Origin: Paraphysomonas bandaiensis
Taxonomy: Eukaryota; Protista; Chrysophyceae
Direction: 5' to 3'
NCBI GenBank assembly: GCA_965644295.1
Contig: CBFFRP010000281.1
Coordinates: 482,386-546,385 of the forward strand
DNA length: 64,000 nt
In this document: piece after piece, positions 4,465 through 28,379 of the stretch
Numbering within the stretch: the stretch's first letter is position 1
Layout: each line of letters begins with the position of its first letter
Program-made: the position numbers and the translations under genes
The notes under the pieces: model-generated
Seen by the model: the letters and a program-made list of their open reading frames with translations, nothing else
What the model was told of the DNA's origin: nothing
The model's database searches: none

Positions 4465-4876
4465 TCCAATATATCATCAAATATTTCACCAGGTTTTATA
4501 CATTTCACCAGCAGGTTTTGGTATTACCTCGACTTAATATAAAACACACAATGAAACTGCCATTATGAAATAGCGGTGGCGACGGCAGTATCGTCCTCAT
4601 TCACCTCACTTCATATTCGTGGTAAAAGCACTTCCAAGAGCATAATCGCACCCCTCTGCGGGACGATACTCTGTTTTATGGGGATCCGCTGGTGTTTGGT
4701 TCAGCAAAAAGAAATTAAGTTATTTTCGCTCAGTAACCGTAAATTGTGTGGTTTGATATATAGCAACAAACGAATCATCACTGTCCAGGCGAACTTGATA
4801 TCTCCCTTCAAGTCGAGGTAATACCAAAACCTGGCTTTTGATGTAAAACCTGGTGAAATTTTTGATGATGGTTGGA
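4465..4876. mobile_element. MITE-like element with ~60-bp imperfect terminal inverted repeats
   Basis: 4473-4535 (atcatcaaatatttcaccaggtttt...caggttttggtattacctcgactt) is the reverse complement of 4810-4869; non-coding interior. Confidence 0.65.
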
Positions 4877-4887
4877 AAAGGGTATAA

Positions 4888-5300
4888 CTATGCACAATAA
4901 GTAACTATGAATTTATCCACTGCTGTAGTTATAATCCAATTTGTAACTACTCCCTTGAGACCATTCATACTCTGCTTAGATAAATTCACGAGCTCAACGC
5001 TGTCACCAATATATAGCCACTGTATGCTTTTCTTTAATGGGTGTCTCCTTTTCAACAGAGGATGCAGTAGATTCATGCGCCCGTCCCACAACTTTAATAT
5101 GTTTCTCTAAAAAAAAACACTCTTCTTGTCGAATGTATGCGCTCAAGCGCCCAGTGCCCTCCACCATCACGAGATGCCTGTGTATTATCGACCCGTCCCA
5201 CTACAATGGCTTCTTGACCATTAAGAGATAGACCTGAACATCCGGTTATAACTACAATATCATTGATAGTCACCTGATGAGACCAGATACAGCCGCCCAA
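4888..5300 (-). pseudogene. Degenerate fragment with two KOW/SH3-like repeats
   Basis: 'NDIVVITGCSGLSLNGQEAIVV' and 'GDSVELVNLSKQSMNGLKGVVT' occur in different frames, with stops and frameshifts. Confidence 0.3.
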
Positions 5301-6638
5301 ATTTACTCTATTTTAATCATAGATATGAGCCCTTGTTACTATACCTCGGATACTAAAGACCATAGATACGAAGTAGTGATTATCTATAAGATCAATCAAC
5401 TGCTGTGTGCGCATACCACAACCATTATACTTATTACAGAACAGAGTGATGAAATTTCACTACAAACCAAACAGATATGATGATTAACTGGTAGTTCCCA
5501 CTGGCAATACGCAGAAAAGGTCAGGGTATTCTTGCATTGGCTTTGATCAGTATTCATGTGGATAACGAATAAGTTATCACCAACTATTCTCCCGATACCT
5601 AACCACGTGCGTGCTTCTTAACATTAATGACCGCCTTCACTGAGAAGATTATAAACCATTTACCGAATAAGAAGCATATCTTTAGGAAATTCGAGATCAT
5701 TCCTCCGGACACTCACAGCAGGTCTTAATTAGTTTCTTGAAATGTTATGAATAACAATTATGTTGGGTGAGTTGATACTACATCATGTTTTGTGCTTTCT
5801 TATGACAACACGAAAGCGTTCCACATTTTGACGAGTACGGTTCAAGTCACGCTTGTACATTAGAACTTATCATCCTATCGAACAGTATCGTAAGAATGGC
5901 TCACAGAAAAACTGATTTGAATTTAGTAATATATACTGAACCCTTGGTACCCACTAAGTTGCGGTATTAAACGTCTAAGAAGCGCATCACGTCAAAAAAT
6001 CAAAGAAAATCAAACATCATACTCGCTATTTCTGTTAAGGCAGTATTAAGACTCATTGATTCACGTATATCTCTTATCGCGTGAATACAGACATGTATAT
6101 AAATAAATATCACATAAACTGAAATAATTACCAAACTGAACAAGATACGCGACTGTAGAAGATACGCAAATGTGTGTGGTGCTAACGATCTGTTCAAACG
6201 TGTCTTGCGATTATACTATTAGACCTTATCCTTCATGTAAATTTTACGTAATCAATCTTTAGCTCTAAAATTACGAAGTGCATTTTTCATTAATACTATG
6301 ACTAGCTATAAATCGTATTTCTTTCGCTTATTAGTTGGTAATAACGCAACTACTAAGTACTATGCGCTATGCGTCTATCATGTATTATCTATTCTATGAC
6401 TTGCTCTGTCAGTGGATACTATGACTTCTTTACAACAGTTGTATGTTGTAAAACTATATGTGGCAGTGAAAATACTACTTTCATAACTGTCAGATACACT
6501 CAAGCATATAATACTAATCACTATTAATAATTGCTTTCATAATACACCCAGCTCGTAGTTAACACAAAGTAAGCAAGCGAGATAATAAGTCTAGTAATAA
6601 AATTATTAAAGAAGTAGCGAAAGTATGGCTACTAGAAC

Positions 6639-7586
6639 CTATGGCGGTGAAAGGACACTCACTGATCCGTCTGCCATATGAGCAACTAGAACTGTCGAAG
6701 CCATTTGGATAAACAAACCGTGCTCAACCACACCAACGGTGTTGTTTAGTTCAATATTCGCGGCCAACGCATCCTTGATGCTCATCTTTTTGTCAAAATG
6801 TAAGTCCACAATGTAGTTACCATTATCGGTAATAGCGATATCATTTCCATCTTGTTTGTTGTTGGATACATTTCCGCGCCGGAGCACGGGACGGCAGCCT
6901 TTTAGTGACGGTAGACCTGCCACAGTGCGAATCGTATGTTCATAGCAGAACGGGGTGATTTCAACCGGCAATGGAAATCCTGGTCCAAGCTCACGTACCA
7001 GTTTAGAATCATCGGCGATTACGATAAAAGTTTTCGAAGCAACTTCTACCTAGTATGCATAAATGATAATTCGTCACATTACAAAACAGCGTTCCCACCA
7101 TTTTTTCTCGCAGTAATGCTCCACCGCCGCCCTTGATCATATTAAAATTTTTATCTATCTGATATAATTAAATTACACAGTGTCACATTTTAATAAAGAA
7201 ATCCATCTGACCTGATCTGCCCCATCAATAGTAACATCCAAGACGGAATGATCATTTAATGTTGCAAGAGGAATTCCAAGAGATAAAGCCTGCGTCTTCG
7301 TAGCTTCGGAGGTTGGTATTGCAATAATGTTTTTCAATTCTCCACTCTTCAGCTTCTGTCCCAGCCGTTCTACTGCGTATTTTGCAGTTGAACCGGTCCC
7401 CAGGCCAACAATCATGCCACTCTTTACATAGTCATCAACACTTTTATACCCCACAATTTGTTTTGCTTTCTCAGACGTTGATTGAGGAGCACAAAGAGAA
7501 GGATGGGATGTTGTGTACATGCATCCAGACGCCATCACACCACACGCCACTACACGACGATGAGCTAGAGTAAATCGGGAAAACAT
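6639..7586 (-). CDS. RPIA: Ribose-5-phosphate isomerase A with N-terminal presequence; 2 short introns
   Basis: GLGTGST, DGADQ, spliced IKGGGGALLREK, PVEI.PF, TDNGN and GVVEHGLF motifs. Confidence 0.96.
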
Positions 7587-7822
7587 TATAAATGTATTCG
7601 ATTGGTATCTATAGGAATAACTTGCGTGTATCAAGTATATGAACAACAAGCATAGTGGTATCTTCCTCTTCTCCCTGCTACGACTGTGCAGGAGTTCCTA
7701 CAGTGGTAGGCTTTTTGGGTAGCATGCGTACAATGATACTCTGTATCTCCATATCTAGACATTCGGTGTACTCATGCAAGCATACTCCTGGTACTGGCGC
7801 ATACATACCATGCATACTGTTG

Positions 7823-8069
7823 TACATACATACATACATACATACATACATACATACATACATACATACATACATACATACATACATACATACATACATA
7901 CATACATACATACATACATACATACATACATACATACATACATACATACATACATACATACATACATACATACATACATACGTACATACATACATACATA
8001 CATACATACATACATACATACATACATACATACATACATACATACATACATACATACACACATACATAC
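7823..8069. repeat. (TACA)n microsatellite, ~60 units
   Basis: Directly visible; lies between the divergent RPIA and histidine kinase genes. Confidence 0.99.
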
Positions 8070-8319
8070 GTACGGCTGTACATAATCATCGTACTAGGTT
8101 TGAATTGTCGCATTGTTTATTGTGTTCGCACTCGCCTCATTGCTGTGGAATTCCTACATGTGTCAGGACATTGCAGGGCATATGCTTATGCCCATTCAAC
8201 CCTTCATATTCCAGCACTCTGTCTGCTATACATGATATACTTACATATACTTCTCCGTACGGAGGATATTAACTAAGAAGTAACTCCCACAGGGTCCTTG
8301 TGGCACTAGTAGGGCTCTT

Positions 8320-11022
8320 ATGATGCCTGAAGCACACGGATTGAATAGCGATCAAGACATGTCGTCATCAATGAATCAAACCCCTCATTCAGATAAGAAA
8401 TTCTCTCAGAATGTATCAAAGAGAGATATACAGTATAAAGTGATATGTCGTATGGGTGCAGGCACTCTTCTCAGTATATTGATTGGGTTGTTAACATATT
8501 ACACACTTGCTAACATACAATACACAGCATTTGAACGAGAGTATAGTTATCTGTCTCGGGGAATTGTGGATTCAGCTCAAACAGCACTCAGTCAAGCACA
8601 CAGTGTGGCGGAGACAGTGTCTGAAGTCTATGGCACCCAGTTTCCTGATTCATCTATGTGGCCTTATGTAGCTAGAGGACATTTTGGTCGAATGGTAGCA
8701 CCAATGATCAGTTTACTGGGTGCAAGAAACATCAATCATGTTCCTATTGTATATCCACGAAACCTGTACGAGTTTGAGACGTTTGCGTATGATTTTTTCG
8801 ACAGTGATGCGGAAAGTATATCTGGATTGGGCATTTCACCCTTTGGAAAGGGTGTATATGCTTTCAATGAATCAGGAATGAAATATCATGACACCACAGG
8901 GGTAACGAATTTTAGCCCATACAATATCATCACACCAGTGTTTCAAGTTGGTAATGTTAAGCAAAATTCACCTGTAGTGATGTATAATACTCACGCGGAA
9001 TCGGTACGAGGAAAAGGTATTGATGGAGTCATTGATTGCTTTGCCTCCAATGGTGACCCTGGCAGTTGCTCAACTCTGACTGACTTTATCTTTTTAGTTC
9101 AAGATGATGTGAAGAGTCCTGCAGCCATATTTTACTATCCTGAAATACCAGCTCACAATTCCTCACATCTGGTCGGATTTGTTGCAGTGGTTTTAAGTTG
9201 GGATGCAGTTCTTGTCAACACATATCATGATCGTAAAGGTAATACGGATATTTTGCTTGTCCTATCCAGCTCTGGCGGTACTACAGTGACTTACACCGCT
9301 CACAATGAGAAAATTGAATACATGGGGGAAGGAGATAAGCACAACAAAAAATATTCTGGTTATGGAGTAAGCGGATGCCTTGATTCTCCTGTGGGAACCG
9401 CTTCGACGTCTGCTAAATACACCTTGGTCGTATATCCAACCAACAGATATTACTACTCATTTGTGAACAGCTATCCCATCGTTGCGGGAGTTGTTACTGG
9501 TTTTGTAGTTATTGCTCTTATTTCGTTATTCGTTCTCTATGATGTCTTTGTTTCCTTGCAAAGATACCGAACAGAGGCTGTGCAATACACAAGGAAAGTA
9601 TTTTTGCGCTGGGTCAGTCATGAAATACGCACACCTCTGAATGCGGTGTATCTTGGCCTGACTTCTCTCTGTGACGCAACTAAAGATACTTATCACAATG
9701 CTCCAACGTCGTCTGAGTCCTTTCAGGAACTAAAAACTGGTTTGGAAAATTCGATTTCTGTATTAGATGATTTTTTGGCGTACAGCTCTTTCGATTCTCA
9801 TAACTATATCTTCAAGGAAGTCGCTATAATTGAACTCATGGAGAGTTGTGTTCGTAGTCACTCTGAAGCAGCAGTCGTGAAGAATATTAAAACAGAATAT
9901 GTGGTAAATTACAAAACAGAAGAATCTTCAAAAGGTGGTGCGTTGAACGTTATGGCAGATATAGATAGATTACGAGAAGCACTTAATCGAGTTTTACTGT
10001 ACTCAATTCATATATCTCCACGTGGTAAAGACTTAATTATATCAGGTATATGCGCACATATTATTAAGTGCTGGTCTAATGGTTTGTTATTGTTAGTTTC
10101 TTGGGATTTACCTATTCCTCAAGTTACTATTTCAGTGTCAAATTACGGCCCATCATTGAATCAAGATTTAATATGTGATGGATCATCATTCGATGTGTCC
10201 CGTCTTCGAACTGGAAGCCACGACAACTTATCCCTGTGGATTGCAGCTAATATTTTTAAAGCTCACGGGGGTAGTATGCTCTTAACGGGTACTGGAGATG
10301 TCGGGTCAACTGTTTCTATTATTCTGCCTCATGTTAACACATCATCTTCCACAAGAAGTGGTAGTATTTTTAAAAATCTTAATGCGTTTATGTCAGTCAA
10401 GTCTCAACGACATGTACTGCCATATTCAAATAGCGCAAGGTCTACAGATGAGTGTGAGAAATCGTTTTGCGAGAAGCGTTTACCGAGTGTCGTGCCCTCT
10501 AGTACGGTTGCATATGCAACTATTGAGAACGCTCATCTTCCTACCCTAAAGATTCTTGTAGTCGATGACGTCTTATCCAATAGAAAGATTTTGGCAAGGC
10601 TATTAACCCAGAGAGGTCATTGCTGCACAATGGCTGAGAATGGGATGGAGTCTATAGGTTTAGTGAAAAAACTTTGGGGTTCTTCGGAACAGTTTGATGT
10701 GATTTGCATGGACTATGAAATGCCGGTGTGTGATGGTCCGACGGCCGCTAGAAGTCTACGTGATATGGATTGCAAAATTCCAATAATTGGAGTTACAGGG
10801 AATGTACTTCAAGAAGATTTGCGCTATTTTGTATCTCAGGGAGCTTCTGTTGTGCTGCCGAAGCCTGTAGTAATGAAATCATTGGAGGAAGAACTTCGAA
10901 AGTTATTTTCGGGCGGAAAGCTTCGTGGAGTTAACACTTCAAGCTATGCCTCAATGGACGGTTCGTTTCGACAGAATTCTGATGTACATGATGCTTCGCT
11001 GGCAATGTTTGGTGGAGCGTGA
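8320..11022 (+). CDS. Hybrid sensor histidine kinase-like protein (TM - CHASE-like - TM - HisKA - degenerate HATPase - REC); probable 51-nt in-frame intron 10046-10096
   Basis: Two TM helices flank a ~320-aa sensor domain; H-box WVSHEIRTPLN; receiver LVVDD...CMDYEMP...GVTG...PKP. Confidence 0.92.
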   Translation: MMPEAHGLNSDQDMSSSMNQTPHSDKKFSQNVSKRDIQYKVICRMGAGTLLSILIGLLTYYTLANIQYTAFEREYSYLSRGIVDSAQTALSQAHSVAETVSEVYGTQFPDSSMWPYVARGHFGRMVAPMISLLGARNINHVPIVYPRNLYEFETFAYDFFDSDAESISGLGISPFGKGVYAFNESGMKYHDTTGVTNFSPYNIITPVFQVGNVKQNSPVVMYNTHAESVRGKGIDGVIDCFASNGDPGSCSTLTDFIFLVQDDVKSPAAIFYYPEIPAHNSSHLVGFVAVVLSWDAVLVNTYHDRKGNTDILLVLSSSGGTTVTYTAHNEKIEYMGEGDKHNKKYSGYGVSGCLDSPVGTASTSAKYTLVVYPTNRYYYSFVNSYPIVAGVVTGFVVIALISLFVLYDVFVSLQRYRTEAVQYTRKVFLRWVSHEIRTPLNAVYLGLTSLCDATKDTYHNAPTSSESFQELKTGLENSISVLDDFLAYSSFDSHNYIFKEVAIIELMESCVRSHSEAAVVKNIKTEYVVNYKTEESSKGGALNVMADIDRLREALNRVLLYSIHISPRGKDLIISGICAHIIKCWSNGLLLLVSWDLPIPQVTISVSNYGPSLNQDLICDGSSFDVSRLRTGSHDNLSLWIAANIFKAHGGSMLLTGTGDVGSTVSIILPHVNTSSSTRSGSIFKNLNAFMSVKSQRHVLPYSNSARSTDECEKSFCEKRLPSVVPSSTVAYATIENAHLPTLKILVVDDVLSNRKILARLLTQRGHCCTMAENGMESIGLVKKLWGSSEQFDVICMDYEMPVCDGPTAARSLRDMDCKIPIIGVTGNVLQEDLRYFVSQGASVVLPKPVVMKSLEEELRKLFSGGKLRGVNTSSYASMDGSFRQNSDVHDASLAMFGGA

Positions 11023-19144: not shown

Positions 19145-22100
19145 TTAGTGCGATACCATAGTGTGCACATGCTGATAGTGCAGCTTCTCGGACAAGGCTT
19201 TAGTCATCACGTCTGCTGTCATCTCTGCCGTTGGCACATGATTCAGCCTGACGATACAGCCTCCCACTTGCTCTCGAATCCAATGATACTTGATCCGAAT
19301 ATGCTTGGAACGTTTATGATTTACCGGGTTCTGAGCTAGATCAATCGCACTCTTGCTGTCCATATTCAAGATTGTTGGAGACGCATTCTTACTGAGCTCA
19401 AATCCACGAATTCCGAGCTCTGTCATCACCCCTCGTATCCATACAATCTCCTGAATTGCAGCATATGCAGCCATATATTCAGCTTCCATAGTCGACGTAG
19501 CCACTGTTGGCTGCAGTCTGGACTGCCATGCAATTGGAGCACCCCACAGATATACGATATACCCTGTAGTGGATCTGCATGTATCCAGATCTCCGGCCCA
19601 ATCTGCATCAGAGTACACACATAGAGGGTCTTCATCTGTGAAATTAGGAAATATGATACCTTGATCAACTGTATTTTCTAAATACAATAAAGTATGCAGA
19701 GCAGCTTGACATGCAGCGTACGTGGGTCTTGTGGTGAACCGGGAGAGAAGATTTACTGTATATGCCATGTCTGGTCTAGTATGCACTGCCAAATACATTA
19801 AGGCACCAATAACAGATTGATAGGGAAATGCATCAACGTATTCTCTCTGTTTTCGAGTTTCTTCCTCTTTTGCATCCTTGGACAACTTTAGGCCAGGTGG
19901 TAGAGGTGTGGTTGCCTTGCACCGTCTCTTCTTTTCTGACAACAAGTGATTGAATCTGGCCACAACATCTTTAGCATATGCAGACTGATGTAACTTAATC
20001 TGGCCATTATGACGCTCAATGGTAAGACCTAAATAATGCTTAAGGTCCCCCATATCTTGCATGGCATATTGAGTCTTAAAGGCGCTGATGACTTCTTCAA
20101 TATGACGGCTGTCAGAGCTGAGCACAATGATATCATCTACATACACAAGTATCATATGTAGGTTATCATCAGTACCCTTGAGTACAAATAAACATGGGTC
20201 AAGAACACATTGTTTATACCCCATCGCCTTTATACTGTCCTTCAGCATTGAATGCCAATTTCGAGGCGCTTGTTTTAGGCCATACAAACTCTTCAGAATC
20301 TTCAAACAACAGCCTTGTGGAATATCTATTCCTGCAGGTGGAGACATAAACACGTCTTCGTCCAGATCTGCATACGGAAATGCCGTTTCTACATCGAGTT
20401 GACGGAGTTGCAGATTGTATCGCAGAGCCAGTGCTAGTGCTAGCCTAAATGATACACCTTTAGCTACTGGGGAGAATGTCTCATTATAGTCGACTCCTTG
20501 TTCTTGAGTAAACCCTTTCGCCACAAGTCGAACTTTGAACTTCTTAATTTTTCCAAGATGGTCGCGCTTTACTTTAAAGACCAATTTAGATTTTATGATT
20601 TTTCGGTGTTTCGGCCTTCGGACAATCTTCCAGCATGTCCTTCGTTCAAGCTTGTGCACCTCCTTCCTGGTAGCTTCAATCCAGTATGTTCTCTGTGGAG
20701 TCTTCTTTGCTTCTGCCAGCGTCTGTGGCTCTTTAATTGTGCTGTTGGAGGAATCAAGAAACAATGAGACATCGCCGAGGACACCAACGTTAACAATGTG
20801 CCGTTTTTTTCGAGGTCGTTTTTCAGTTCTGGGATTTCGATCTGCCCCACCTGTTGAAGATGCGCCCCGATTTGAGCGGTCAGGAGTCCTCTGTTCATTG
20901 TCACTGTCATTACAAGTCTGATCCAACTCATTTCGCAAACTATTAAACTTGTCGGTCTGACACTTTGTAGAGTGAGTCATCTTTACTACATCTTTGATAT
21001 GAATTGGAGTTTGCTCCTCGGTAGTATTTCCTTTCATATCTAATCTCCTATATGCAACAATGACTCCTCTTCTCTCTATCACTCTGGTGGTAACATAACA
21101 CAGGTGTCCATCAAGATGTCTGAGGCCCACCAGGTACTGATAGTCATTTACACTCTCTGCTGTTTCTGAGGTGTCGATTTGTAGATTATCTATTTCGTCG
21201 AAATACTCCTGTGAACGCTCTGGAATTGACTCATCAAACTGTGCATTGACTGCAACAATAATAGCATTCAGGTCTGGAATATATATTTGGTGTCCAACAG
21301 GTTGTTGACATTGTCCCATATAGTATCCAGGTTTTCCCTTTTCTTTCCACTCTTTGCGGCGCTGCTCCTTCGGCACAATAGCCCATGCCTTGCAGCCCCA
21401 GATCTTCAAGTCACTCACATCTGGTGCGGTTCCAGTAATATACTCAAAAGGTGAGATGTATCCTTTCGTTGTCTTCGTAGGTAACCTGTTGATCAGATAT
21501 ACAGCATGCAAGACTGCTTTGAACCAAAATACTGATGGCATGCCACTATCGAGCAATATAGCAAGGGCCATCTCCTTCACTGTACGATTAGTGCGTTCCG
21601 ATAGCGAATTCATTTCGGGTGTGTCACGTGGAGTCCAAGTAACCTGTACAGTCCTTGTGCTGGTGGTTTCACGTAAGTACTGCCTGACATGTTGCCCTAC
21701 TAGTTCTCCTGCGCCATCTGCATGATATCGTCGTAGTTGCAATCCTTCTTTGACAAGTTGGGTCTCTACCATGTCCTTCATACACTTTAACACTTCACTC
21801 CCAGTCTTGTTTTTCAACCCATAAGCCCATACATGTTTTGCATCACTGTGCTTGAATAGTAACACATGTTTGTAGCCTTCCATCGATGGCGTGTTTAGGA
21901 CTTCCATCGTATCTGCACTGAGCACCCCTCTCTCCTTTGGGTTGTTGTCTAAGTTCATCAACTGGCGTGGAGTCCTGAAGTTCTTTCTCGTGAGTTTCGA
22001 TCGCATGCAGGTATTACATTTGCATATCGTTTTTTTGTGTTTTTTTCTGAAATATTTCTTGTCCAGATTTATTCCATCAACTAGGCCTCGGCGGTCGGAC

Positions 22101-23662
22101 TCAGTCAGTTTATCATAGTTGACATGGCCAAGTCTTTTGTGCCATAGAATTCGCTGGTCATCAAACCCCTGCTCCTCAAGTGCTGCTGAGGATTCTTCTC
22201 CAAGCTGAAGTAAGTCTTCGAGTCGAACTGGATATAATCCATTAACACTTCTCTGTCTAATGAGTGTCTTGTTCGTAGTCTTATTTCGAATGACGACTTC
22301 ATCATTATCGAACGTCACAACACAACCCCTATCTGTGATGCTCTTCATATCTACGAGGTTCTTACTTGCTTCAGGTGCGTAGTACACCTTTTTAAAGCTT
22401 CCTACATCGCCAACACTGTGTATTGACAGTTTACCTTTGTTCGCTGTGGACATCTGCCTATCAGCGCGCTGAAGGTTGGTCATGTGGTTTTTGGAGGTAA
22501 GGATCATCTTGTTGCACCCGCTGTCTAAATAAATAACATCTGACATGCTCTGTGCTAGATTCACCTCTTCTTCCACACATATCATCGATTCGTATCCCGC
22601 TTCATCTTCTGAATCATGTACAGACACTCGCGGTTTCTTCTTGTTCTTGTAGGGTGCCGTTTCCCTTCTAGAGTCTCGCCCCCGTTTAGAACTGACCACT
22701 GCAGCTTTAGCAGTCTTCAAGTGGAAGCAGTCTTTAGTCTGATGGCCTGGGATGTCACATATCTCACACACAGGTAGCTTTGTTTTGTTATCACCCCTGT
22801 TTCTGTGATCTCTATCTTTTCTCTGTGATCTTGTCCCCTTCATCCTCTTTATGACATGCTCTGGAGTCTTGCACTCCCTAGCAAAGTGGCCAAGTTTCTT
22901 GCACTTATTGCATCTGCCCTTTCTCTTGTGCTCTTTCCATTTACTGTCATCCACTGCTTGATTGACACTGTCTTCCCCTGAATTTTGCAACGCATGCTTG
23001 CCGAATGATGTGTTTTCATACCCTTTGATTAGGCTGCTTGCTCTTGCGTATGTCACATCGTTTGCTGTATACAGGCTGTGTGCTAGTTGGGAATATCTCT
23101 TGTCTGTGAGACCTTCCTTTAGTCGAGTGAGCTTGTCGTCTTCCGTGACTTCACGACCTAGATTCTCGAGAATCTTGGCCTGGGCTTCAACGCTGTCGAC
23201 GAACTCTGCTCCTGACTGACTTGAGGTAATCTTCATTGAATTGAACTTTGTGACCTCTGCCTGTACTGTATTCTTTTCAACATTGAGAAATCTCTCTTCC
23301 AGTGCCTGTAGTAACCCTTTTGCTGTACTTCCTTCGTAGAGAGCCGCTGTTGTGCCTGCTTTTGGGTGAGCATTGCACACTTCCATCAGGAAGGAGTACG
23401 CGGTCTCGTTCCGGGTGTTCCAGAGTTTCTTCGCTTTGCGTAGTCGCTTCTTCTGTGCATCAGTCATATGAGCTCCCGCTGGGACTGTAGAGTCTAGATC
23501 ATGAATGTGCCTTGGTTTATCCTTTGAGAGGACAAGATGAGCTCGATTGTGTCTCATGAGGAATGAGGTGAAGAACTTCTTGAATTTCTTGAAGTTCAGT
23601 TCCTCGAAGGGAGGTACCTTTGAGCCTGAGGCGACATTCGTGAAATTTCCATCCGCTGCCAT
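19145..23662 (-). CDS. Copia Gag-Pol polyprotein (2 CCHC knuckles, protease, integrase, RT, RNase H), 1505 aa
   Basis: CNKCKKLGHFAREC, CEICDIPGHQTKDC, YLDSGC, WHKRLGH..CNTC, D-D-E, LYGLKQ, YVDD, SDADWAGD, RSKHIRIKYH; PR-IN-RT-RH order. Confidence 0.98.
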   Translation of the reverse strand: MAADGNFTNVASGSKVPPFEELNFKKFKKFFTSFLMRHNRAHLVLSKDKPRHIHDLDSTVPAGAHMTDAQKKRLRKAKKLWNTRNETAYSFLMEVCNAHPKAGTTAALYEGSTAKGLLQALEERFLNVEKNTVQAEVTKFNSMKITSSQSGAEFVDSVEAQAKILENLGREVTEDDKLTRLKEGLTDKRYSQLAHSLYTANDVTYARASSLIKGYENTSFGKHALQNSGEDSVNQAVDDSKWKEHKRKGRCNKCKKLGHFARECKTPEHVIKRMKGTRSQRKDRDHRNRGDNKTKLPVCEICDIPGHQTKDCFHLKTAKAAVVSSKRGRDSRRETAPYKNKKKPRVSVHDSEDEAGYESMICVEEEVNLAQSMSDVIYLDSGCNKMILTSKNHMTNLQRADRQMSTANKGKLSIHSVGDVGSFKKVYYAPEASKNLVDMKSITDRGCVVTFDNDEVVIRNKTTNKTLIRQRSVNGLYPVRLEDLLQLGEESSAALEEQGFDDQRILWHKRLGHVNYDKLTESDRRGLVDGINLDKKYFRKKHKKTICKCNTCMRSKLTRKNFRTPRQLMNLDNNPKERGVLSADTMEVLNTPSMEGYKHVLLFKHSDAKHVWAYGLKNKTGSEVLKCMKDMVETQLVKEGLQLRRYHADGAGELVGQHVRQYLRETTSTRTVQVTWTPRDTPEMNSLSERTNRTVKEMALAILLDSGMPSVFWFKAVLHAVYLINRLPTKTTKGYISPFEYITGTAPDVSDLKIWGCKAWAIVPKEQRRKEWKEKGKPGYYMGQCQQPVGHQIYIPDLNAIIVAVNAQFDESIPERSQEYFDEIDNLQIDTSETAESVNDYQYLVGLRHLDGHLCYVTTRVIERRGVIVAYRRLDMKGNTTEEQTPIHIKDVVKMTHSTKCQTDKFNSLRNELDQTCNDSDNEQRTPDRSNRGASSTGGADRNPRTEKRPRKKRHIVNVGVLGDVSLFLDSSNSTIKEPQTLAEAKKTPQRTYWIEATRKEVHKLERRTCWKIVRRPKHRKIIKSKLVFKVKRDHLGKIKKFKVRLVAKGFTQEQGVDYNETFSPVAKGVSFRLALALALRYNLQLRQLDVETAFPYADLDEDVFMSPPAGIDIPQGCCLKILKSLYGLKQAPRNWHSMLKDSIKAMGYKQCVLDPCLFVLKGTDDNLHMILVYVDDIIVLSSDSRHIEEVISAFKTQYAMQDMGDLKHYLGLTIERHNGQIKLHQSAYAKDVVARFNHLLSEKKRRCKATTPLPPGLKLSKDAKEEETRKQREYVDAFPYQSVIGALMYLAVHTRPDMAYTVNLLSRFTTRPTYAACQAALHTLLYLENTVDQGIIFPNFTDEDPLCVYSDADWAGDLDTCRSTTGYIVYLWGAPIAWQSRLQPTVATSTMEAEYMAAYAAIQEIVWIRGVMTELGIRGFELSKNASPTILNMDSKSAIDLAQNPVNHKRSKHIRIKYHWIREQVGGCIVRLNHVPTAEMTADVMTKALSEKLHYQHVHTMVSH

Positions 23663-23968: not shown

Positions 23969-24373
23969 AATAGTTACAACTGTTCCTTGAAAGTACATTG
24001 TGTGCAACAAAGCAAGGTTATGGTTTACGTGATGAGCAAGGTCAACTTCAGTGTAAAATCCAAATTCTTACACCTTGCTTGGAAGAATTTTACGAGTTGG
24101 TTGGAGGTATACTTTCAGAAAACAATGACTATTGTAGAGAATCACGCATTAGCAAACGTCTGCTGATGAACTGAACTTCTGTCTTCTACACAGGTGTAAA
24201 ATAAACTTGACCAACGACATTTTTTATAGACTAGTAATTAACAATGAACTCATGCTACTGGACAAAGTTAATTAGAAAACCTACTTATGACCAGGTCATC
24301 AGTAAATACGATTATATAGAGATGACACAGAGCGATCAGTGCTATTCTCAATAGTAACGAAGACAAGGAACAT

Positions 24374-27300
24374 CTACTTAGGGCCATAGGGGGAATAATC
24401 GGTCATATTAGGATCAACAAACTTTTCGTAGTTCTTCTTGAACATACCAACCAGCTTGTCCGCGGTGGCATCATACTTGGACTGTCAAAATATCGTCAAA
24501 ACATATACATTCAATACAGTATAATGGTGTACATAATCACGTGAATGACAGTGTGGTCAGGGCTTCTTAGAGGTTATACACTCACAGGAATCCTTTGCAG
24601 GAAACATTCGCATGAGAGATATCTTCATCCCACACATATAAAATACTACATGGCATTGTGCATAACAAGCAGAGTATGCATATTACCGTGTCAGCCCATG
24701 TTTCCCGAGGGTTAAGGAGCTTAGATGGCACACCAGGTAATTCAGTTGGCACCTACACAGAGATAAAAAACTCACACCATATACTAGAAAAAGAAGTATG
24801 GTCATCGCTTACCTCGAATCCGAATCTGTCGTCGGTGCGCATGGGTGCCTCGTGAATGGAGCCATTAAGGACAGCGTCGATGGCAGCACGGGTCACCTAG
24901 CACAGGATATAACAAACACGTATTTCACAGAATGATTGGAAAGTACCTTAATGCTCATGCGTTCACCCTCGCCGTATGCTCCCCCAGACCACCTACAAAA
25001 ATGATCACTTTTTATCACAATACAGTAAAATACATACCCGGTGTTGATAAGGAAGACATGGGTTCCATGAGTCTTCAACTTCTCTTGAAGCAGATCGGCA
25101 TACTAGATAGAAAAATTAAGAGAATAAAAGTACAATTATTGTAAGCATCTAAAGTAAAGTTGAATGATAGTGCGGTCAGGGCTTCTTAGAGGTTATACAC
25201 TCACAGGAATCCTTTGCAGGAAACATTCGCATGAGAGATATCTTCATCCCACACATACATTCAATACAGTATAATGGTGTACATATTCACGTGAATGATA
25301 GTGTGGTCAGGGCTTCTTAGAGGTTATACACTCACAGGAATCCTTTGCAGGAAACATTCGCATGAGAGATATCTTCATCCCACACATACATTCAATACAG
25401 TATAATGGTGTACATATTCACATGAATGATAGTGTGGTCAGGGCTTCTTAGAGGTTATACACTCACAGGAATCCTTTGCAGGAAACATTCGCATGAGAGA
25501 TATCTTCATCCCACACATACATTCAATACAGTATAATGGTGTACATATTCACGTGAACGATAGTGTGGTCAGGGCTTCTTAGAGGTTATACACTCACAGG
25601 AATCCTTTGCAGGAAACATTCGCATGAGAGATATCTTCATCCCACACATACATTCAATACAGTATAATGGTGTACATATTCACGTGAATGATAGTGTGGT
25701 CAGGGCTTCTTAGAGGTTATACACTCACAGGAATCCTTTGCAGGAAACATTCGCATGAGAGATATCTTCATCCCACACATACATTCAATACAGTATAATG
25801 GTGTACATATTCACGTGAACGATAGTGTGGTCAGGGCTTCTTAGAGGTTATACACTCACAGGAATCCTTTGCAGGAAACATTCGCATGAGAGATATCTTC
25901 ATCCCACACATACATTCAATACAGTATAATGGTGTACATATTCACGTGAACGATAGTGTGGTCAGGGCTTCTTAGAGGTTATACACTCACAGGAATCCTT
26001 TGCAGGAAACATTCGCATGAGAGATATCTTCATCCCACACATACATTCAATACAGTATAATGGTGTACATATTCACGTGAATGATAGTGTGGTCAGGGCT
26101 TCTTAGAGGTTATACACTCACAGGAATCCTTTGCAGGAAACATTCGCATGAGAGATATCTTCATCCCACACATACATTCAATACAGTATAATGGTGTACA
26201 TATTCACGTGAACGATAGTGTGGTCAGGGCTTCTTAGAGGTTATACACTCACAGGAATCCTTTGCAGGAAACATTCGCATGAGAGATATCTTCATCCCAC
26301 ACATACATTCAATACAGTATAATGGTGTACATATTCACGTGAATGATAGTGTGGTCAGGGCTTCTTAGAGGTTATACACTCACAGGAATCCTTTGCAGGA
26401 AACATTCGCATGAGAGATATCTTCATCCCACACATACATTCAATACAGTATAATGGTGTACATATTCACGTCTACATGAATGTGCCCATATCGTATAGAG
26501 TGATATCTATCACAGTGTTACCTTGGTAGGGTGTAGAGTGAGGAAAGCAGCGCCAAAGCATGCGGAGAAGGTTGCTTCTGGCTCAGTCACACCGCGTTCT
26601 GTACCGGCCACCTGGAGTAGATAAAACCGAGCAGATGTTAAGCATTACAATAGTTACACCGAACGACTGGGCCTACCTTGGCAGTGTATCCAGAGAGGAA
26701 GTGGTACATAGCCTGGCTAGCAGAAAGCTTGGAAACAGGGGGCAATACTCCAAAGGCATCACCTGCACTAGCGTTAACTCTATAGACTACAGGTTTCGTA
26801 ACACACATGTGAGGAAGAAAATAGCCTTCGGGTGAGATCCAAGAGAGCTTTCCTGGTAGTTCGGGATGTGGTGAATGGGGTAAGACACACGACCGTTCTG
26901 TGTCTTCTCCACACTGAAACCCAGAGAACAAAAGATTAGACTCAAAGCTCGAAAAACTAAAAACTCAAATCATAGAACGTACTTGAAAAAGTCGACTTCT
27001 TTAGTATTAGGATCGACGTGGACATTCTCTAGTAGGGCATCACGACGAATCGCGTGGAAAATCTCAGGTTCCGTAGCCTCAGATAGATTTATGGTTTTCG
27101 CGTAGCAACCCTACAATGCGCATAAACAAAAACTATATGAATTGAAAGTGAAACTTACCCCTTCGAAGTTGAAAACACCATGATCGTCCCAACCGTGTTC
27201 GTCGTCGCCAATCAAATTACGACTAACAGTGGTGAAAGACCAATTAAGTAATGCAGAAAAAAACGAAGTGTCTTGTTTAAAATGATACAGCAGGCATGAG

Positions 27301-28379
27301 TAAAATGTGCATACAATAATTCGTTAATGAGATAACATCTTCGTACTTGGGATCAGCAGAGAGAGTTGTTTTGCCCGTGCCTGAGAGACCGAAGTACAAC
27401 GCTGTATCTCCATCCTTGCCTACAATGATACACAGTCATTAGCTATTCCATACATCTTATGTGGACGCTATAATACATACCGATGTTAGCCGAGCAATGC
27501 ATTGACATAATGCCACTAAGTGGGAGCCAGTAGTGCATCATTGAGAAAATGCCCTGCAAAGCCAACATAATCAGCAAGGATGATAGACATGAATACTACG
27601 ACAAGAACCTTCTTCATCTCGCCCCCATAAAAGGTTCCACCAATTAAAGCGGTTCGATCTTCTACATTAAATGTAACAAACACTTCGCTGTTGAGTCCAT
27701 CCTCCTTCCAGTTCTTGTTTGTTACATTGCAGCCATTGATAATCTGTGTGAAGTCAAAATACGTAAAGCAAGAGGGTAATATAAACTTACAGTGAAGTCA
27801 GGCTCAAAACCTTCGATCTCTTCAGCAGTTTTAGGACGAATAAACATATTAGTGACAAAGTGATGCTGCCATGCGATCTCTGTCACGAAGCGAACCTAAC
27901 AAAAAGACTTAATGTAAGCATATGTATCCTATTAAGTCAATGACTACCTTCTTTCTGGATGCAGGATTCGCGCCACAGTATCCATCAAACACATAAATAT
28001 TCTTTGCGTTGTTGCTAAAATGACTGGTAACTTCCTTATGTAGTCTCTTGTATACCTCAGGCTTCATGGGTCTATTAACAGGCCCCCACCATATGTTATC
28101 CGAAGAAGGCTTGGACTCCACAATGTACTTATCTTTAGGAGATCGGCCAGTGAATTTCCCTGTGTCCACAGACACAGTACCGTTCTTAACAACAGTAAGC
28201 CCTGATGCGACCTCATGATCATAGATATCATCATAGCCAAGATTACGGAATATCTTCGTATTTGGCTGAGGAGTGATGCCTAGGACACTGAGATCCAAGC
28301 CTCCAGCACTGCTTGGAGCAGCAAACCCCCTGGCCAAAAAGGGGGTTGATCTATGCACACGAGAGAGAGATCTAAACAT
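24374..28379 (-). CDS. pckA: Phosphoenolpyruvate carboxykinase (ATP), predicted mitochondrial; many introns
   Basis: [74 protein letters not shown]; presequence [20 protein letters not shown]. Confidence 0.96.
24551..24635 (-). ncRNA. SNORD61: Intronic box C/D snoRNA, U61/SNORD61-like (single copy in last PEPCK intron 24482-24686)
   Basis: Minus strand reads GTGTGG-G-ATGAAGA(box C)...CCTCTAAGAAGCC-CTGA(box D)-CCACAC, with a terminal stem; guide is antisense to the conserved 18S motif CUUCUUAGAGG. Confidence 0.85.
25161..26471 (-). ncRNA. SNORD61: Tandem array of 10 x 131 bp, each unit holding one U61/SNORD61-like C/D snoRNA (85 nt) and a 46-nt spacer, in PEPCK intron 25103-26521
   Basis: Low-coordinate ends of the copies lie at 25170, 25301, 25432, 25563, 25694, 25825, 25956, 26087, 26218, 26349. 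Boxes, stem and guide match the single copy, sense to the host transcript. Confidence 0.85.

What the first reader, a model, noticed from the sequence alone, without database searches (positions are those of the whole stretch)
25161..26471. A 'minisatellite' that is a 10-copy tandem array of a U61/SNORD61-like C/D snoRNA inside a PEPCK intron
Seen: ten 131-bp units. On the host (minus) strand each reads GTGTGG-G-ATGAAGA...CCTCTAAGAAGCC-CTGA-CCACAC, i.e. terminal stem, box C variant, guide and box D. Known: CUUCUUAGAGG is a conserved 18S rRNA motif. As I recall, vertebrate U61 carries CCTCTAAGAAG before box D and guides Um1442; the D+5 rule gives the same U here. The few variants I can see fall in the spacer or stem, not in the boxes or guide. 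The intron is 1.4 kb against ~50 nt elsewhere. Inference: recent tandem amplification of a housekeeping rRNA guide into an intronic polycistron, hosted by a gluconeogenic enzyme rather than a ribosome-related gene. This could tie 18S methylation dosage to carbon metabolism.
Basis: partly seen in the sequence, partly recalled or inferred. Interest (0 to 1): 0.9.

Follow-up and report, generated by a model that had tools for sequence, protein, structure and literature searches.

The report
Tandem U61 snoRNA array in intron
A marine alga carries ten identical tandem copies of a ribosomal-RNA methylation guide (U61) in one PEPCK intron; the array is real and recently amplified, but this genome holds several such arrays, so a special link to carbon metabolism is unlikely.

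Summary
The array is ten 131-bp units (25161-26471). On the host (minus) strand each unit is an 85-nt box C/D RNA plus a 46-nt spacer. An eleventh identical copy lies in the last intron. RNA contigs show that both introns are spliced out of an intact 553-aa ATP-type PEPCK mRNA.

The guide pairs perfectly over 12 nt with the organism's own 18S and places the methylation on U1376. This is the site guided by SNORD61 in human and AtU61 in Arabidopsis. Rfam's only match is snoU61, below its gathering score. A related alga has one copy in the orthologous intron (E 4.6e-4), with conserved boxes and guide and a compensatory stem change. The tenfold array and the last-intron copy are therefore lineage-specific.

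K-mer depth in two DNA data sets supports about 10-13 copies. These eleven copies are the only U61 genes in the 62.6-Mb assembly.

The carbon-metabolism link is not supported. The scan had already noted many tandem snoRNA arrays on other DNA of this genome, and I verified three: U14-like (about 57 copies), 32 copies in an SPB4/DDX55-like helicase intron, and 22 copies of a SNORD110-type guide.

I could not test for the mature RNA, its processing or the methylation.

The parts
25161..26471 (-). Tandem array of ten 131-bp units (85-nt U61-type box C/D snoRNA body plus 46-nt spacer). Bodies on the minus strand: 26433-26349, 26302-26218, 26171-26087, 26040-25956, 25909-25825, 25778-25694, 25647-25563, 25516-25432, 25385-25301, 25254-25170.
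   Evidence: TRF; unit register and variants; Rfam snoU61 hits on every unit; k-mer depth about 10-13x the flanks.
25301..25385 (-). Representative snoRNA body (copy 9). Terminal stem nt 1-6/80-85; 3-nt bulge G7 A8 U9; box C AUGAAGA nt 8-14 (window 25378-25372); guide CCUCUAAGAAGC nt 63-74 (25323-25312); box D CUGA nt 76-79 (25310-25307).
   Evidence: Sequence; Rfam alignment; complementarity scan against own 18S; alignment with the relative.
25170..25254 (-). Last (3'-most) array copy. It ends 67 nt before the 3' splice site. Its stem variant CCGCAC gives U.G where the other copies have U-A and the relative has C-G.
25103..26521 (-). Intron 10 of the PEPCK gene (1419 nt, GT..AG, phase 0 after residue 431); it holds the array.
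   Evidence: Spliced joint 25102/26522 in RNA contigs of runs X10 and X12; CDS reconstruction; orthologous intron in L017.
24551..24635 (-). Solitary eleventh copy, with a body 85/85 identical to the array consensus. It is followed by one spacer-equivalent (47/50 identical, to about 24502); beyond that there is no similarity. It ends 69 nt before the 3' splice site.
24482..24686 (-). Intron 14, the last intron (205 nt, after residue 518), which holds the solitary copy.
   Evidence: Joint 24481/24687 in X10 and X12; an unspliced contig in X12 covers 24530-24697 at depth 4.5 against 163 for the mRNA.
24374..28379 (-). Host gene: ATP-dependent phosphoenolpyruvate carboxykinase, 15 exons, 553 aa, with an N-terminal extension before the Pfam domain.
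   Evidence: Spliced CDS; Pfam PF01293 on four exons; 14 GT..AG joints in RNA contigs.

Best explanation
These are genuine genes for the organism's U61-type box C/D snoRNA. The RNA is about 85 nt. Its 12-nt antisense element upstream of box D pairs with 18S rRNA 1373-1384 and should direct fibrillarin to 2'-O-methylate U1376. This is the homologue of human Um1442 and Arabidopsis Um1384. The ancestral state was one copy in the PEPCK intron after residue 431, about 70 nt from the 3' splice site. In this lineage that copy was amplified in tandem to ten, and one full repeat unit was copied into the last intron. The eleven copies are the only U61 genes in the assembly, so U61 is made from PEPCK pre-mRNA.

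Shown: the sequence anatomy, the target match, intron status, copy number, orthology and lineage specificity, and that tandem arrays of snoRNA genes recur in this genome.

Inferred: each unit binds Snu13/Nop56/Nop58/fibrillarin at its k-turn. The intron is then cut in the spacers and trimmed by exonucleases to the snoRNP borders, as described for intronic snoRNA clusters of plants and green algae, so that one splicing event can yield up to ten snoRNAs. The amplification reflects a genome-wide tendency, with or without dosage benefit, and not a PEPCK-specific regulatory design.
For: Array and anatomy.

Family: snoU61 is the only Rfam family matched on all eleven copies (21.3 bits). The relative's orthologue scores 33.9 bits, E 4.6e-4.

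Target: the own 18S has GCUUCUUAGAGG at 1373-1384. This is the only complementarity of 8 nt or more between the RNA and 18S or 5.8S, and the D+5 nucleotide falls on U1376. Site-to-guide assignments in human and Arabidopsis come from PMC11550049 and PMC8583080.

Constraint: the solitary copy's body is 85/85 identical while its adjoining spacer is 47/50 (P of no change in 85 nt at that rate is about 0.005). Against the relative, boxes and guide are conserved although the intron flanks cannot be aligned. Stem position 4 changes U-A to C-G, with U.G in the last array copy.

Intron status and expression of the host: 14 GT..AG joints in RNA contigs, including a polyA marine metatranscriptome.

Copy number: k-mer depth about 10x in X4 and about 11-13x in X1.

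Sole locus: DNA search. The guide-plus-box-D pattern matches exactly only these 11 sites; the 1-mismatch hits (5) equal the reversed-pattern control (5).

Orthologous intron with a single copy and no tandem repeat.

Genome-wide habit: U14-like array of about 57 copies, period 255, 98%. 32 copies of 182 bp in an intron of an SPB4-like helicase gene. 22 copies of 166 bp carrying a SNORD110-type guide.

Precedent for processing intronic clusters: PMC7671301.
Against: No Rfam hit reaches the gathering score. Box C deviates at position 5 (AUGAAGA), and the relative has box D CCGA. All runs were available only as assembled contigs, so neither a mature ~85-nt RNA nor processing intermediates could be seen. 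Methylation of U1376 is untested. Units and spacers show no unusually stable fold that would mark an endonuclease site (z -0.30 and 0.04). Within the array the copies are too alike to show selection on each one, so nine of the ten could be neutral passengers. The 28S is largely missing from the assembly, so other targets could not be excluded.
Confidence: 0.75

Rival explanations
1. Only one snoRNA per intron is made. The 3'-most array copy and the solitary copy, both about 67-69 nt from a 3' splice site, are processed by the splicing-dependent exonucleolytic route. The nine upstream copies are degraded with the lariat and are neutral by-products of a genome prone to tandem duplication.
For: The last array copy, the solitary copy and the relative's single copy end 67, 69 and 73 nt before their 3' splice sites. 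This is near the spacing I recall as optimal for mammalian intronic box C/D snoRNAs (Hirose and Steitz 2001, from memory); PMC2780460 states that this distance matters for processing. No structured cleavage signal was found in the spacers. Array copies are too similar to show selection on each.
Against: In the 32-copy array in the SPB4-like helicase intron, the last complete copy ends about 170 nt from the likely 3' splice site, so the spacing is not general here. Several large arrays exist in the genome, which is hard to reconcile with every extra copy being waste. Polycistronic intronic clusters are processed in plants and green algae.
Confidence: 0.2
2. The array acts mainly in cis or as a long RNA. 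With snoRNPs at both ends and no internal cleavage, the intron would survive as a sno-lncRNA of about 1.26 kb, or the bulky snoRNP-laden intron would modulate PEPCK splicing.
For: Two or more snoRNAs in one intron are the known precondition for sno-lncRNAs (review PMC11028025). An RNA contig containing spacer, body and spacer exists in run X10 at depth 173, against 4,658-10,638 for exons.
Against: That contig is equally explained by pre-mRNA or lariat. The fully spliced mRNA dominates in both RNA runs. The guide and its target are canonical and conserved, which is sufficient reason for the genes to exist.
Confidence: 0.07
3. One reading: hosting in a gluconeogenic gene couples 18S U1376 methylation dosage to carbon metabolism.
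For: All U61 genes of the assembly lie in PEPCK introns, so U61 synthesis depends on PEPCK transcription unless there is an internal promoter. The association predates the split from the relative.
Against: Other arrays sit in unrelated contexts, including a ribosome-biogenesis helicase gene. PEPCK genes of other relatives lack both the intron and the snoRNA, so the link is a narrow historical accident. In these runs PEPCK is abundantly expressed and may simply be a convenient strong host. No physiological data exist.
Confidence: 0.07
4. The units are a decaying satellite derived from a snoRNA pseudogene, or an assembly artefact.
For: Sub-threshold Rfam score; non-canonical position 5 of box C.
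Against: K-mer depth in two DNA data sets supports the copy number. The bodies are identical and intact, conserved against a paralogous copy and an orthologue, with a compensatory stem change. No other U61 gene exists to do the job.
Confidence: 0.03

Closest known systems
U61 / SNORD61 / AtU61 (Rfam clan CL00067: RF00270, RF01170)
   Same: Box C/D architecture. Guide CCUCUAAGAAG two nucleotides upstream of box D, as in the Rfam consensus. The target is the CUUCUUAGAGG site of 18S, which is methylated at Um1442 in human and Um1384 in Arabidopsis.
   Different: It scores 21.3 bits against a gathering score of 55. Box C is AUGAAGA. The internal region is unrelated. There are eleven copies in one gene. 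In other protists the same RNA also carries a SNORD110-type D' guide, which is decayed here.
Intronic snoRNA gene clusters of rice, Chlamydomonas and Ostreococcus
   Same: Several snoRNA genes lie in one spliceosomal intron of a protein-coding gene, in the sense orientation, and are presumed to be processed from a polycistronic precursor (PMC7671301; Liang 2002 and Chen 2008 by reference only).
   Different: Here the cluster is homogeneous, with ten identical copies of one snoRNA at a strict 131-bp period. The host is a metabolic enzyme gene. The organism is a marine alga that other agents of this scan called diatom-like (not tested by me). I found no paper describing how snoRNA genes are arranged in diatoms (not read in full).
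Multi-copy, linked and clustered snoRNA genes of Euglena and trypanosomatids
   Same: Many modification-guide snoRNA genes are multi-copy and clustered (PMC2784804). This resembles the genome-wide arrays seen here.
   Different: [quoted passage not shown]
Mammalian tandem repeats SNORD113/114, SNORD115/116 and rat Bsr
   Same: Large local tandem amplification of one box C/D snoRNA, with concerted evolution and copy-number change (PMC11028025).
   Different: In mammals each copy has its own intron in a repeated non-coding host unit, and the RNAs are orphans at imprinted loci. Here all ten share one intron of a coding gene, since the RNA contigs splice across the whole 1419 nt, and the rRNA target is canonical.

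Membership tests
Box C/D snoRNA (class) | Box C (RUGAUGA) near the 5' end and box D (CUGA) near the 3' end | tested here: met
   AUGAAGA (one deviation, at position 5) at nt 8-14 and CUGA at nt 76-79 of all eleven copies. Both align to the boxes of the Rfam model.
Box C/D snoRNA (class) | Terminal stem that juxtaposes C and D into a k-turn | tested here: met
   A 6-bp stem GUGUGG/CCACAC, a 3-nt bulge, then G.A/A.G. There is a compensatory U-A to C-G change against the relative and a U.G intermediate in the last copy. The stem appears in the centroid fold.
Box C/D snoRNA (class) | Antisense element of 10 nt or more ending next to box D, with the target nucleotide paired to the fifth position upstream of D | tested here: met
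   A 12-nt perfect duplex with own 18S 1373-1384; snoRNA nt 71 pairs with U1376. No other match of 8 nt or more to 18S or 5.8S.
Box C/D snoRNA (class) | Accumulates as a stable small RNA bound to fibrillarin, Nop56, Nop58 and Snu13 | not testable with these tools
   Only assembled contigs of public runs were available.
U61 / SNORD61 (Rfam RF01170 / RF00270) | Guide for the 18S site homologous to human Um1442 and Arabidopsis Um1384 | tested here: met
   Same guide and same spacing to box D as the Rfam consensus. The motif is present in the own 18S. Site assignments come from the literature.
U61 / SNORD61 (Rfam RF01170 / RF00270) | Covariance-model score at or above the curated gathering score (55 bits) | tested here: not met
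   21.3 bits, E 0.31; nothing at gathering level in the window. The relative's orthologue scores 33.9 bits, E 4.6e-4. I therefore file it as a functional orthologue by guide and target, not as a formal Rfam member.
U61 / SNORD61 (Rfam RF01170 / RF00270) | The target uridine is 2'-O-methylated in vivo | not testable with these tools
   This needs RiboMeth-seq or primer extension on this organism's rRNA.
Intronic polycistronic snoRNA cluster (plant / green-alga type) | Two or more snoRNA genes in one spliceosomal intron, on the host's strand | tested here: met
   Ten copies lie inside the 25103-26521 intron, whose removal is seen in two RNA runs.
Intronic polycistronic snoRNA cluster (plant / green-alga type) | Individual snoRNAs released by cleavage between units followed by trimming | not testable with these tools
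   No raw reads were available. No special spacer structure was found.
Mammalian-type tandem snoRNA repeat (SNORD115/116-like) | One snoRNA per intron of a repeated exon-intron host unit; orphan targets | tested here: not met
   A single splice joint spans all ten copies, and the target is a canonical rRNA site.

The most novel reading that the evidence does not exclude
This alga, unlike a relative that keeps a single U61 copy, may have undergone a recent genome-wide burst that turned many snoRNA genes into homogeneous high-copy tandem arrays of 10 to about 57 copies, several inside spliceosomal introns of protein-coding genes. That would imply an efficient splicing-position-independent pathway that cuts such introns into many snoRNAs. 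It would also imply a dedicated amplification or spreading mechanism. The last-intron copy corresponds to exactly one repeat unit, as expected if excised single units can re-insert elsewhere.
Probability: 0.3. Interest if true: 0.6.

Novelty: new member of a known kind. Interest (0 to 1): 0.4.

Why it matters
This is a cleanly documented case, with an outgroup, of a housekeeping rRNA-modification guide going from one intronic copy to ten within a lineage. The organism's entire supply of that guide depends on one metabolic gene's introns. Together with the other arrays verified in this genome, it suggests that marine algae of this group may organise snoRNA genes in a way not yet described for them. 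It also offers a natural system for two questions: whether many snoRNAs can be made from one intron, and whether snoRNA gene dosage matters. It does not by itself show any coupling between ribosome modification and carbon metabolism.

Tried and rejected
1. Searching the own genome for the eukaryotic SSU family (RF01960) failed twice with tool errors. I found the rDNA by a motif search instead.

2. My first exon-1 coordinates were out of frame and were corrected.

3. Fold stability of the RNA body and of a unit with its spacers is no better than shuffles (z -0.30 and 0.04). This gives no evidence for a processing hairpin. It is uninformative for box C/D RNAs, which are not strongly folded.

4. 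PEPCK loci of seven further relatives (L019, L025-L029, L031) carry no U61 guide. L019, L027 and L029 also have no intron at residue 431. This gave no extra orthologues for covariation.

5. I considered building a covariance model from the metagenomic U61-like RNAs (alignments A2 and A3). I dropped it because those sequences were retrieved with a pattern that already contains the boxes and guide, so a score for our copies would be circular. A pattern search with a reversed-pattern control answered the question of other loci instead.

6. I tested the idea that arrays grow upstream of a copy fixed about 70 nt from the 3' splice site, using the SPB4-like helicase array. It was not supported: the last complete copy lies about 170 nt from the likely splice site.

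7. A D' guide: none matches 18S or 5.8S. 28S could not be tested, because only short LSU fragments are in the assembly.

8. The Chlamydomonas (PMC2390600) and rice (PMC135747) cluster papers are not held. I cite them only through papers that reference them.

9. I could not find the 70-80 nt spacing rule stated in a held paper, so it is marked as recalled from memory.

Full report
**Observation.** Tandem Repeats Finder gives 25161-26471, period 131, 10.0 copies, 99% matches and no indels. On the minus strand each unit is an 85-nt body followed by a 46-nt spacer. The body has:
- a terminal stem, GUGUGG at nt 1-6 paired with CCACAC at nt 80-85;
- box C, AUGAAGA, at nt 8-14;
- the guide, CCUCUAAGAAGC, at nt 63-74;
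- box D, CUGA, at nt 76-79.

The ten bodies are identical except A82G in the last copy, which converts a stem U-A pair into U.G. The only other variants are an A/G site (four units) and a C>T (one unit), both in the spacer. That is too few variant sites to show, within the array, that selection spares the boxes.

**Host gene.** RNA contigs from a culture run (X10) and a polyA marine metatranscriptome (X12) contain 14 GT..AG joints on the minus strand.
- One joint removes 25103-26521, the 1419-nt intron that holds the array.
- One removes 24482-24686, the 205-nt intron that holds the solitary copy.
- The other twelve introns are 44-124 nt.
- Joining the exons gives an uninterrupted 553-aa protein, and its exons match Pfam PEPCK_ATP.

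The array intron is intron 10, phase 0, after residue 431. The solitary copy is in intron 14, the last, after residue 518.

**Copy number.** All public runs were available only as assembled contigs.
- In DNA run X1 the unique flanks have k-mer depth 86-108, and the short contigs covering the repeat unit have 817-1400.
- In X4 the flanks have 37-40. A contig spanning spacer plus body, present only in the array, has 379, about 10x.
- Also in X4, a contig over the A-variant spacer has 196, about 5x. The window has five such spacers.

The tool warns that summed depth is not a copy number, so I use only per-contig depths within one run. They fit about 10 copies in X4 and about 11-13 in X1, and they exclude a single copy.

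**What the RNA is.** In a permissive Rfam scan of 24000-28000, snoU61 (RF01170) is the only family matched, on all eleven copies, at 21.3 bits (E 0.31). This is well below the gathering score of 55. Infernal aligns our UGAAGA to box C, CUGA to box D, and CCUCUAAGAAG to the consensus guide, with the same two-nucleotide gap before box D.

I recovered the organism's own rDNA. The canonical 18S is 1796 nt and reads GCUUCUUAGAGG at 1373-1384. This is a perfect 12-bp partner for snoRNA nt 63-74. It is also the only complementarity of 8 nt or more between the RNA and 18S or 5.8S. The fifth nucleotide upstream of box D (nt 71) pairs with U1376. Published tables assign this site to SNORD61 in human (Um1442) and to AtU61 in Arabidopsis (Um1384, listed as equivalent to human Um1442). 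The yeast column is blank for this site.

**Comparative evidence.** A profile search with PEPCK exon 1 found exon fragments from related genomes, and I fetched their contigs.
- In the closest relative (L017 and L018, 81% identity in exon 1), Rfam finds one snoU61 match at 33.9 bits, E 4.6e-4, on the PEPCK strand.
- tblastn places this copy in an intron immediately after residue 431, the same position as the array intron.
- That locus has no tandem repeat. Its counterpart of our last intron is about 91 nt and has no snoRNA.
- Aligned with our copies, the relative keeps the guide, the k-turn G.A/A.G core and much of the interior, while the intron flanks cannot be aligned.
- Stem position 4 is U-A in ours and C-G in the relative, with U.G in our last array copy. 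The pair next to the sheared G.A pairs is A.U in ours, C.C in the relative and U.U in the consensus.

Within our genome the solitary copy provides a second test. Its body is 85/85 identical to the array consensus. The adjoining spacer-equivalent is 47/50, and similarity then stops on both sides. At the flank's rate, 85 unchanged positions have a probability of about 0.005.

More distant PEPCK genes have no U61 guide (L019, L025-L029, L031). L019, L027 and L029 also lack the residue-431 intron. Hosting in PEPCK is therefore old enough to be shared with one sampled relative, but it is narrow. The tenfold array and the intron-14 copy arose in this lineage.

**Sole source.** A DNA search of the 62.6-Mb assembly finds the unit only in this gene. 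The pattern of guide plus box D matches exactly only at the eleven copies. With one mismatch it adds five sites, the same number as the reversed-pattern control.

**U61 elsewhere.** A metagenome scan for box C, guide and box D found U61-like RNAs in other protist contigs, none of them in PEPCK. Three of these also carry AUCUGUCAAUCC as a D' guide, the SNORD110-type guide. In our copies the corresponding stretch (UAUCUCUCAUGCG) no longer matches 18S.

**Genome context changes the interpretation.** The scan's index lists many unchecked first-reader notes of tandem snoRNA arrays elsewhere in this genome. I tested this lead myself.
- The U14 family gives about 57 tandem hits at a 255-bp period on contig C434 (49 bits, E 5e-8; 98% identity by TRF).
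- Weaker hits of the same search (30 bits, E 0.009) marked a second array on C120. It has 32.1 copies of 182 bp. Each unit has GUGAUGA and CUGA boxes. The flanking exons encode helicase motif VI and the SPB4 C-terminal extension, so it lies in an intron of a ribosome-biogenesis helicase gene.
- The SNORD110-type guide plus CUGA occurs 22 times at a 166-bp period on C563, with no control hits. That unit pairs over 12 nt with 18S 1223-1234.
- In the 64-kb window, the U61 array is the only minisatellite.

Tandem amplification of snoRNA genes, inside and outside introns, is therefore a habit of this genome, and PEPCK is one of several hosts.

**Mechanism.** Shown: the genes, their target, their intronic position in an abundantly represented mRNA, their number and their history. 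Inferred from established box C/D biology: Snu13 binds each k-turn co-transcriptionally and recruits Nop56, Nop58 and fibrillarin. The RNA is released from the intron and guides methylation of U1376.

How ten copies leave one intron is the open step. The plant and green-alga model is cleavage in the spacers followed by exonucleolytic trimming. It fits the existence of several large arrays. It also fits the helicase array, whose last copy lies about 170 nt from the splice site.

The main rival is that only the 3'-most copy and the solitary copy are productive. Both end 67-69 nt from a 3' splice site, and the relative's copy ends 73 nt away. This is close to the spacing I recall as optimal in mammals. 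The spacers show no special structure.

A sno-lncRNA or a cis effect on splicing remains possible but has no specific support.

The other arrays, and the absence of the arrangement in most relatives, argue that the host is a historical accident.

**Limits.**
- There were no raw reads, so there is no evidence on mature RNA, ends, levels or methylation.
- The 28S is mostly absent from the assembly.
- I did not determine the organism's identity. Marine metatranscriptomes hold the gene, and other agents of the scan called the organism diatom-like.

**Verdict.** This is a real, recently amplified intronic array of the organism's only U61-type snoRNA genes. It is a new member of known kinds (U61 orthologues, intronic snoRNA clusters, tandem snoRNA repeats). 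Its interest lies in the clean outgroup and in the genome-wide pattern, not in the link to PEPCK.

Noticed in passing
window 24502-24635 (-): The intron-14 copy corresponds to exactly one 131-bp repeat unit (body plus one spacer, then about 3 more matching bases). Its 5' flank is unrelated, and it has no poly(A) tail or obvious target-site duplication. This looks like DNA-level copying of a single unit, not retroposition.
   Followed up: partly
window, every spacer of 25161-26471 (e.g. 25287-25298): Each spacer contains the 12-nt palindrome ATTCACGTGAAT, with a CACGTG core (an E-box/G-box-like motif). There are nine intact copies in the array: one spacer reads CATGTG, and the motif is cut short after the last copy. 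The solitary copy's flank has it with one change. Whether it binds a factor or marks a cleavage site is unknown.
   Followed up: no
G000:C434:87990-102345 (L032): About 57 tandem U14-like box C/D snoRNA genes, period 255 bp, 98% identity (Rfam SNORD14 49 bits, E 5e-8, below gathering).
   Followed up: partly
G000:C120:41320-47196 (L037 2821-8697, minus strand): 32 tandem copies (182 bp, 95%) of another box C/D-like RNA in an intron of an SPB4/DDX55-like helicase gene. The last complete copy lies about 170 nt upstream of the likely 3' splice site.
   Followed up: partly
G000:C563:55575-59076 (L034): 22 tandem copies (166 bp) of a dual-guide box C/D RNA. Its D' guide is SNORD110-type (12 nt to 18S 1223-1234), and a second guide matches 18S 467-477 over 11 nt. 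It shares GAUAUCUCUCAYGMGAAU (16/18) with U61 body nt 12-29 (p about 0.0035 by shuffling). The relative's U61 does not share this stretch, so it could be recombination between arrays or chance.
   Followed up: partly
L020 836-906, L022 6881-6955, L024 1527-1597, L021 898-966: U61-like snoRNAs of other protists in metagenome contigs. Three combine the U61 guide with a SNORD110-type D' guide in one RNA. L021's copy lies about 420 nt from a Z122-like snoRNA, forming a mixed cluster.
   Followed up: partly
window 25372-25378 and 25307-25310; L017 11908-11914 and 11980-11983: The k-turn pair next to the sheared G.A pairs is A.U here, C.C in the relative (box C AUGACGA, box D CCGA) and U.U in the Rfam consensus. 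Both partners differ in the relative, which has an unusual CCGA box D.
   Followed up: no
window 26301-26461 as laid in run X10 (record 9): An RNA-run contig joins the array-type 5' spacer and body to a 3' spacer that carries the two letters specific to the intron-14 copy (26334, 26347). Either that strain has such an array unit, or the assembler crossed between loci through the identical body.
   Followed up: no
window 19145-23662 (-): An intact 1505-aa Ty1/copia-type polyprotein ORF (RVT_2, GAG-pre-integrase, SH3-like domains) begins about 700 nt downstream of the PEPCK stop codon.
   Followed up: partly
L011, L013, L015, L012 (contigs C68, C196, C525, C188): The rDNA is fragmented and rearranged in the assembly. 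There are partial 18S copies and an LSU fragment abutting the 5' end of an 18S. No complete 28S was found, so 28S targets of any snoRNA cannot be checked.
   Followed up: no
window 7823-8073: A TACA microsatellite of about 63 copies, the only other sizeable tandem repeat in the window.
   Followed up: no
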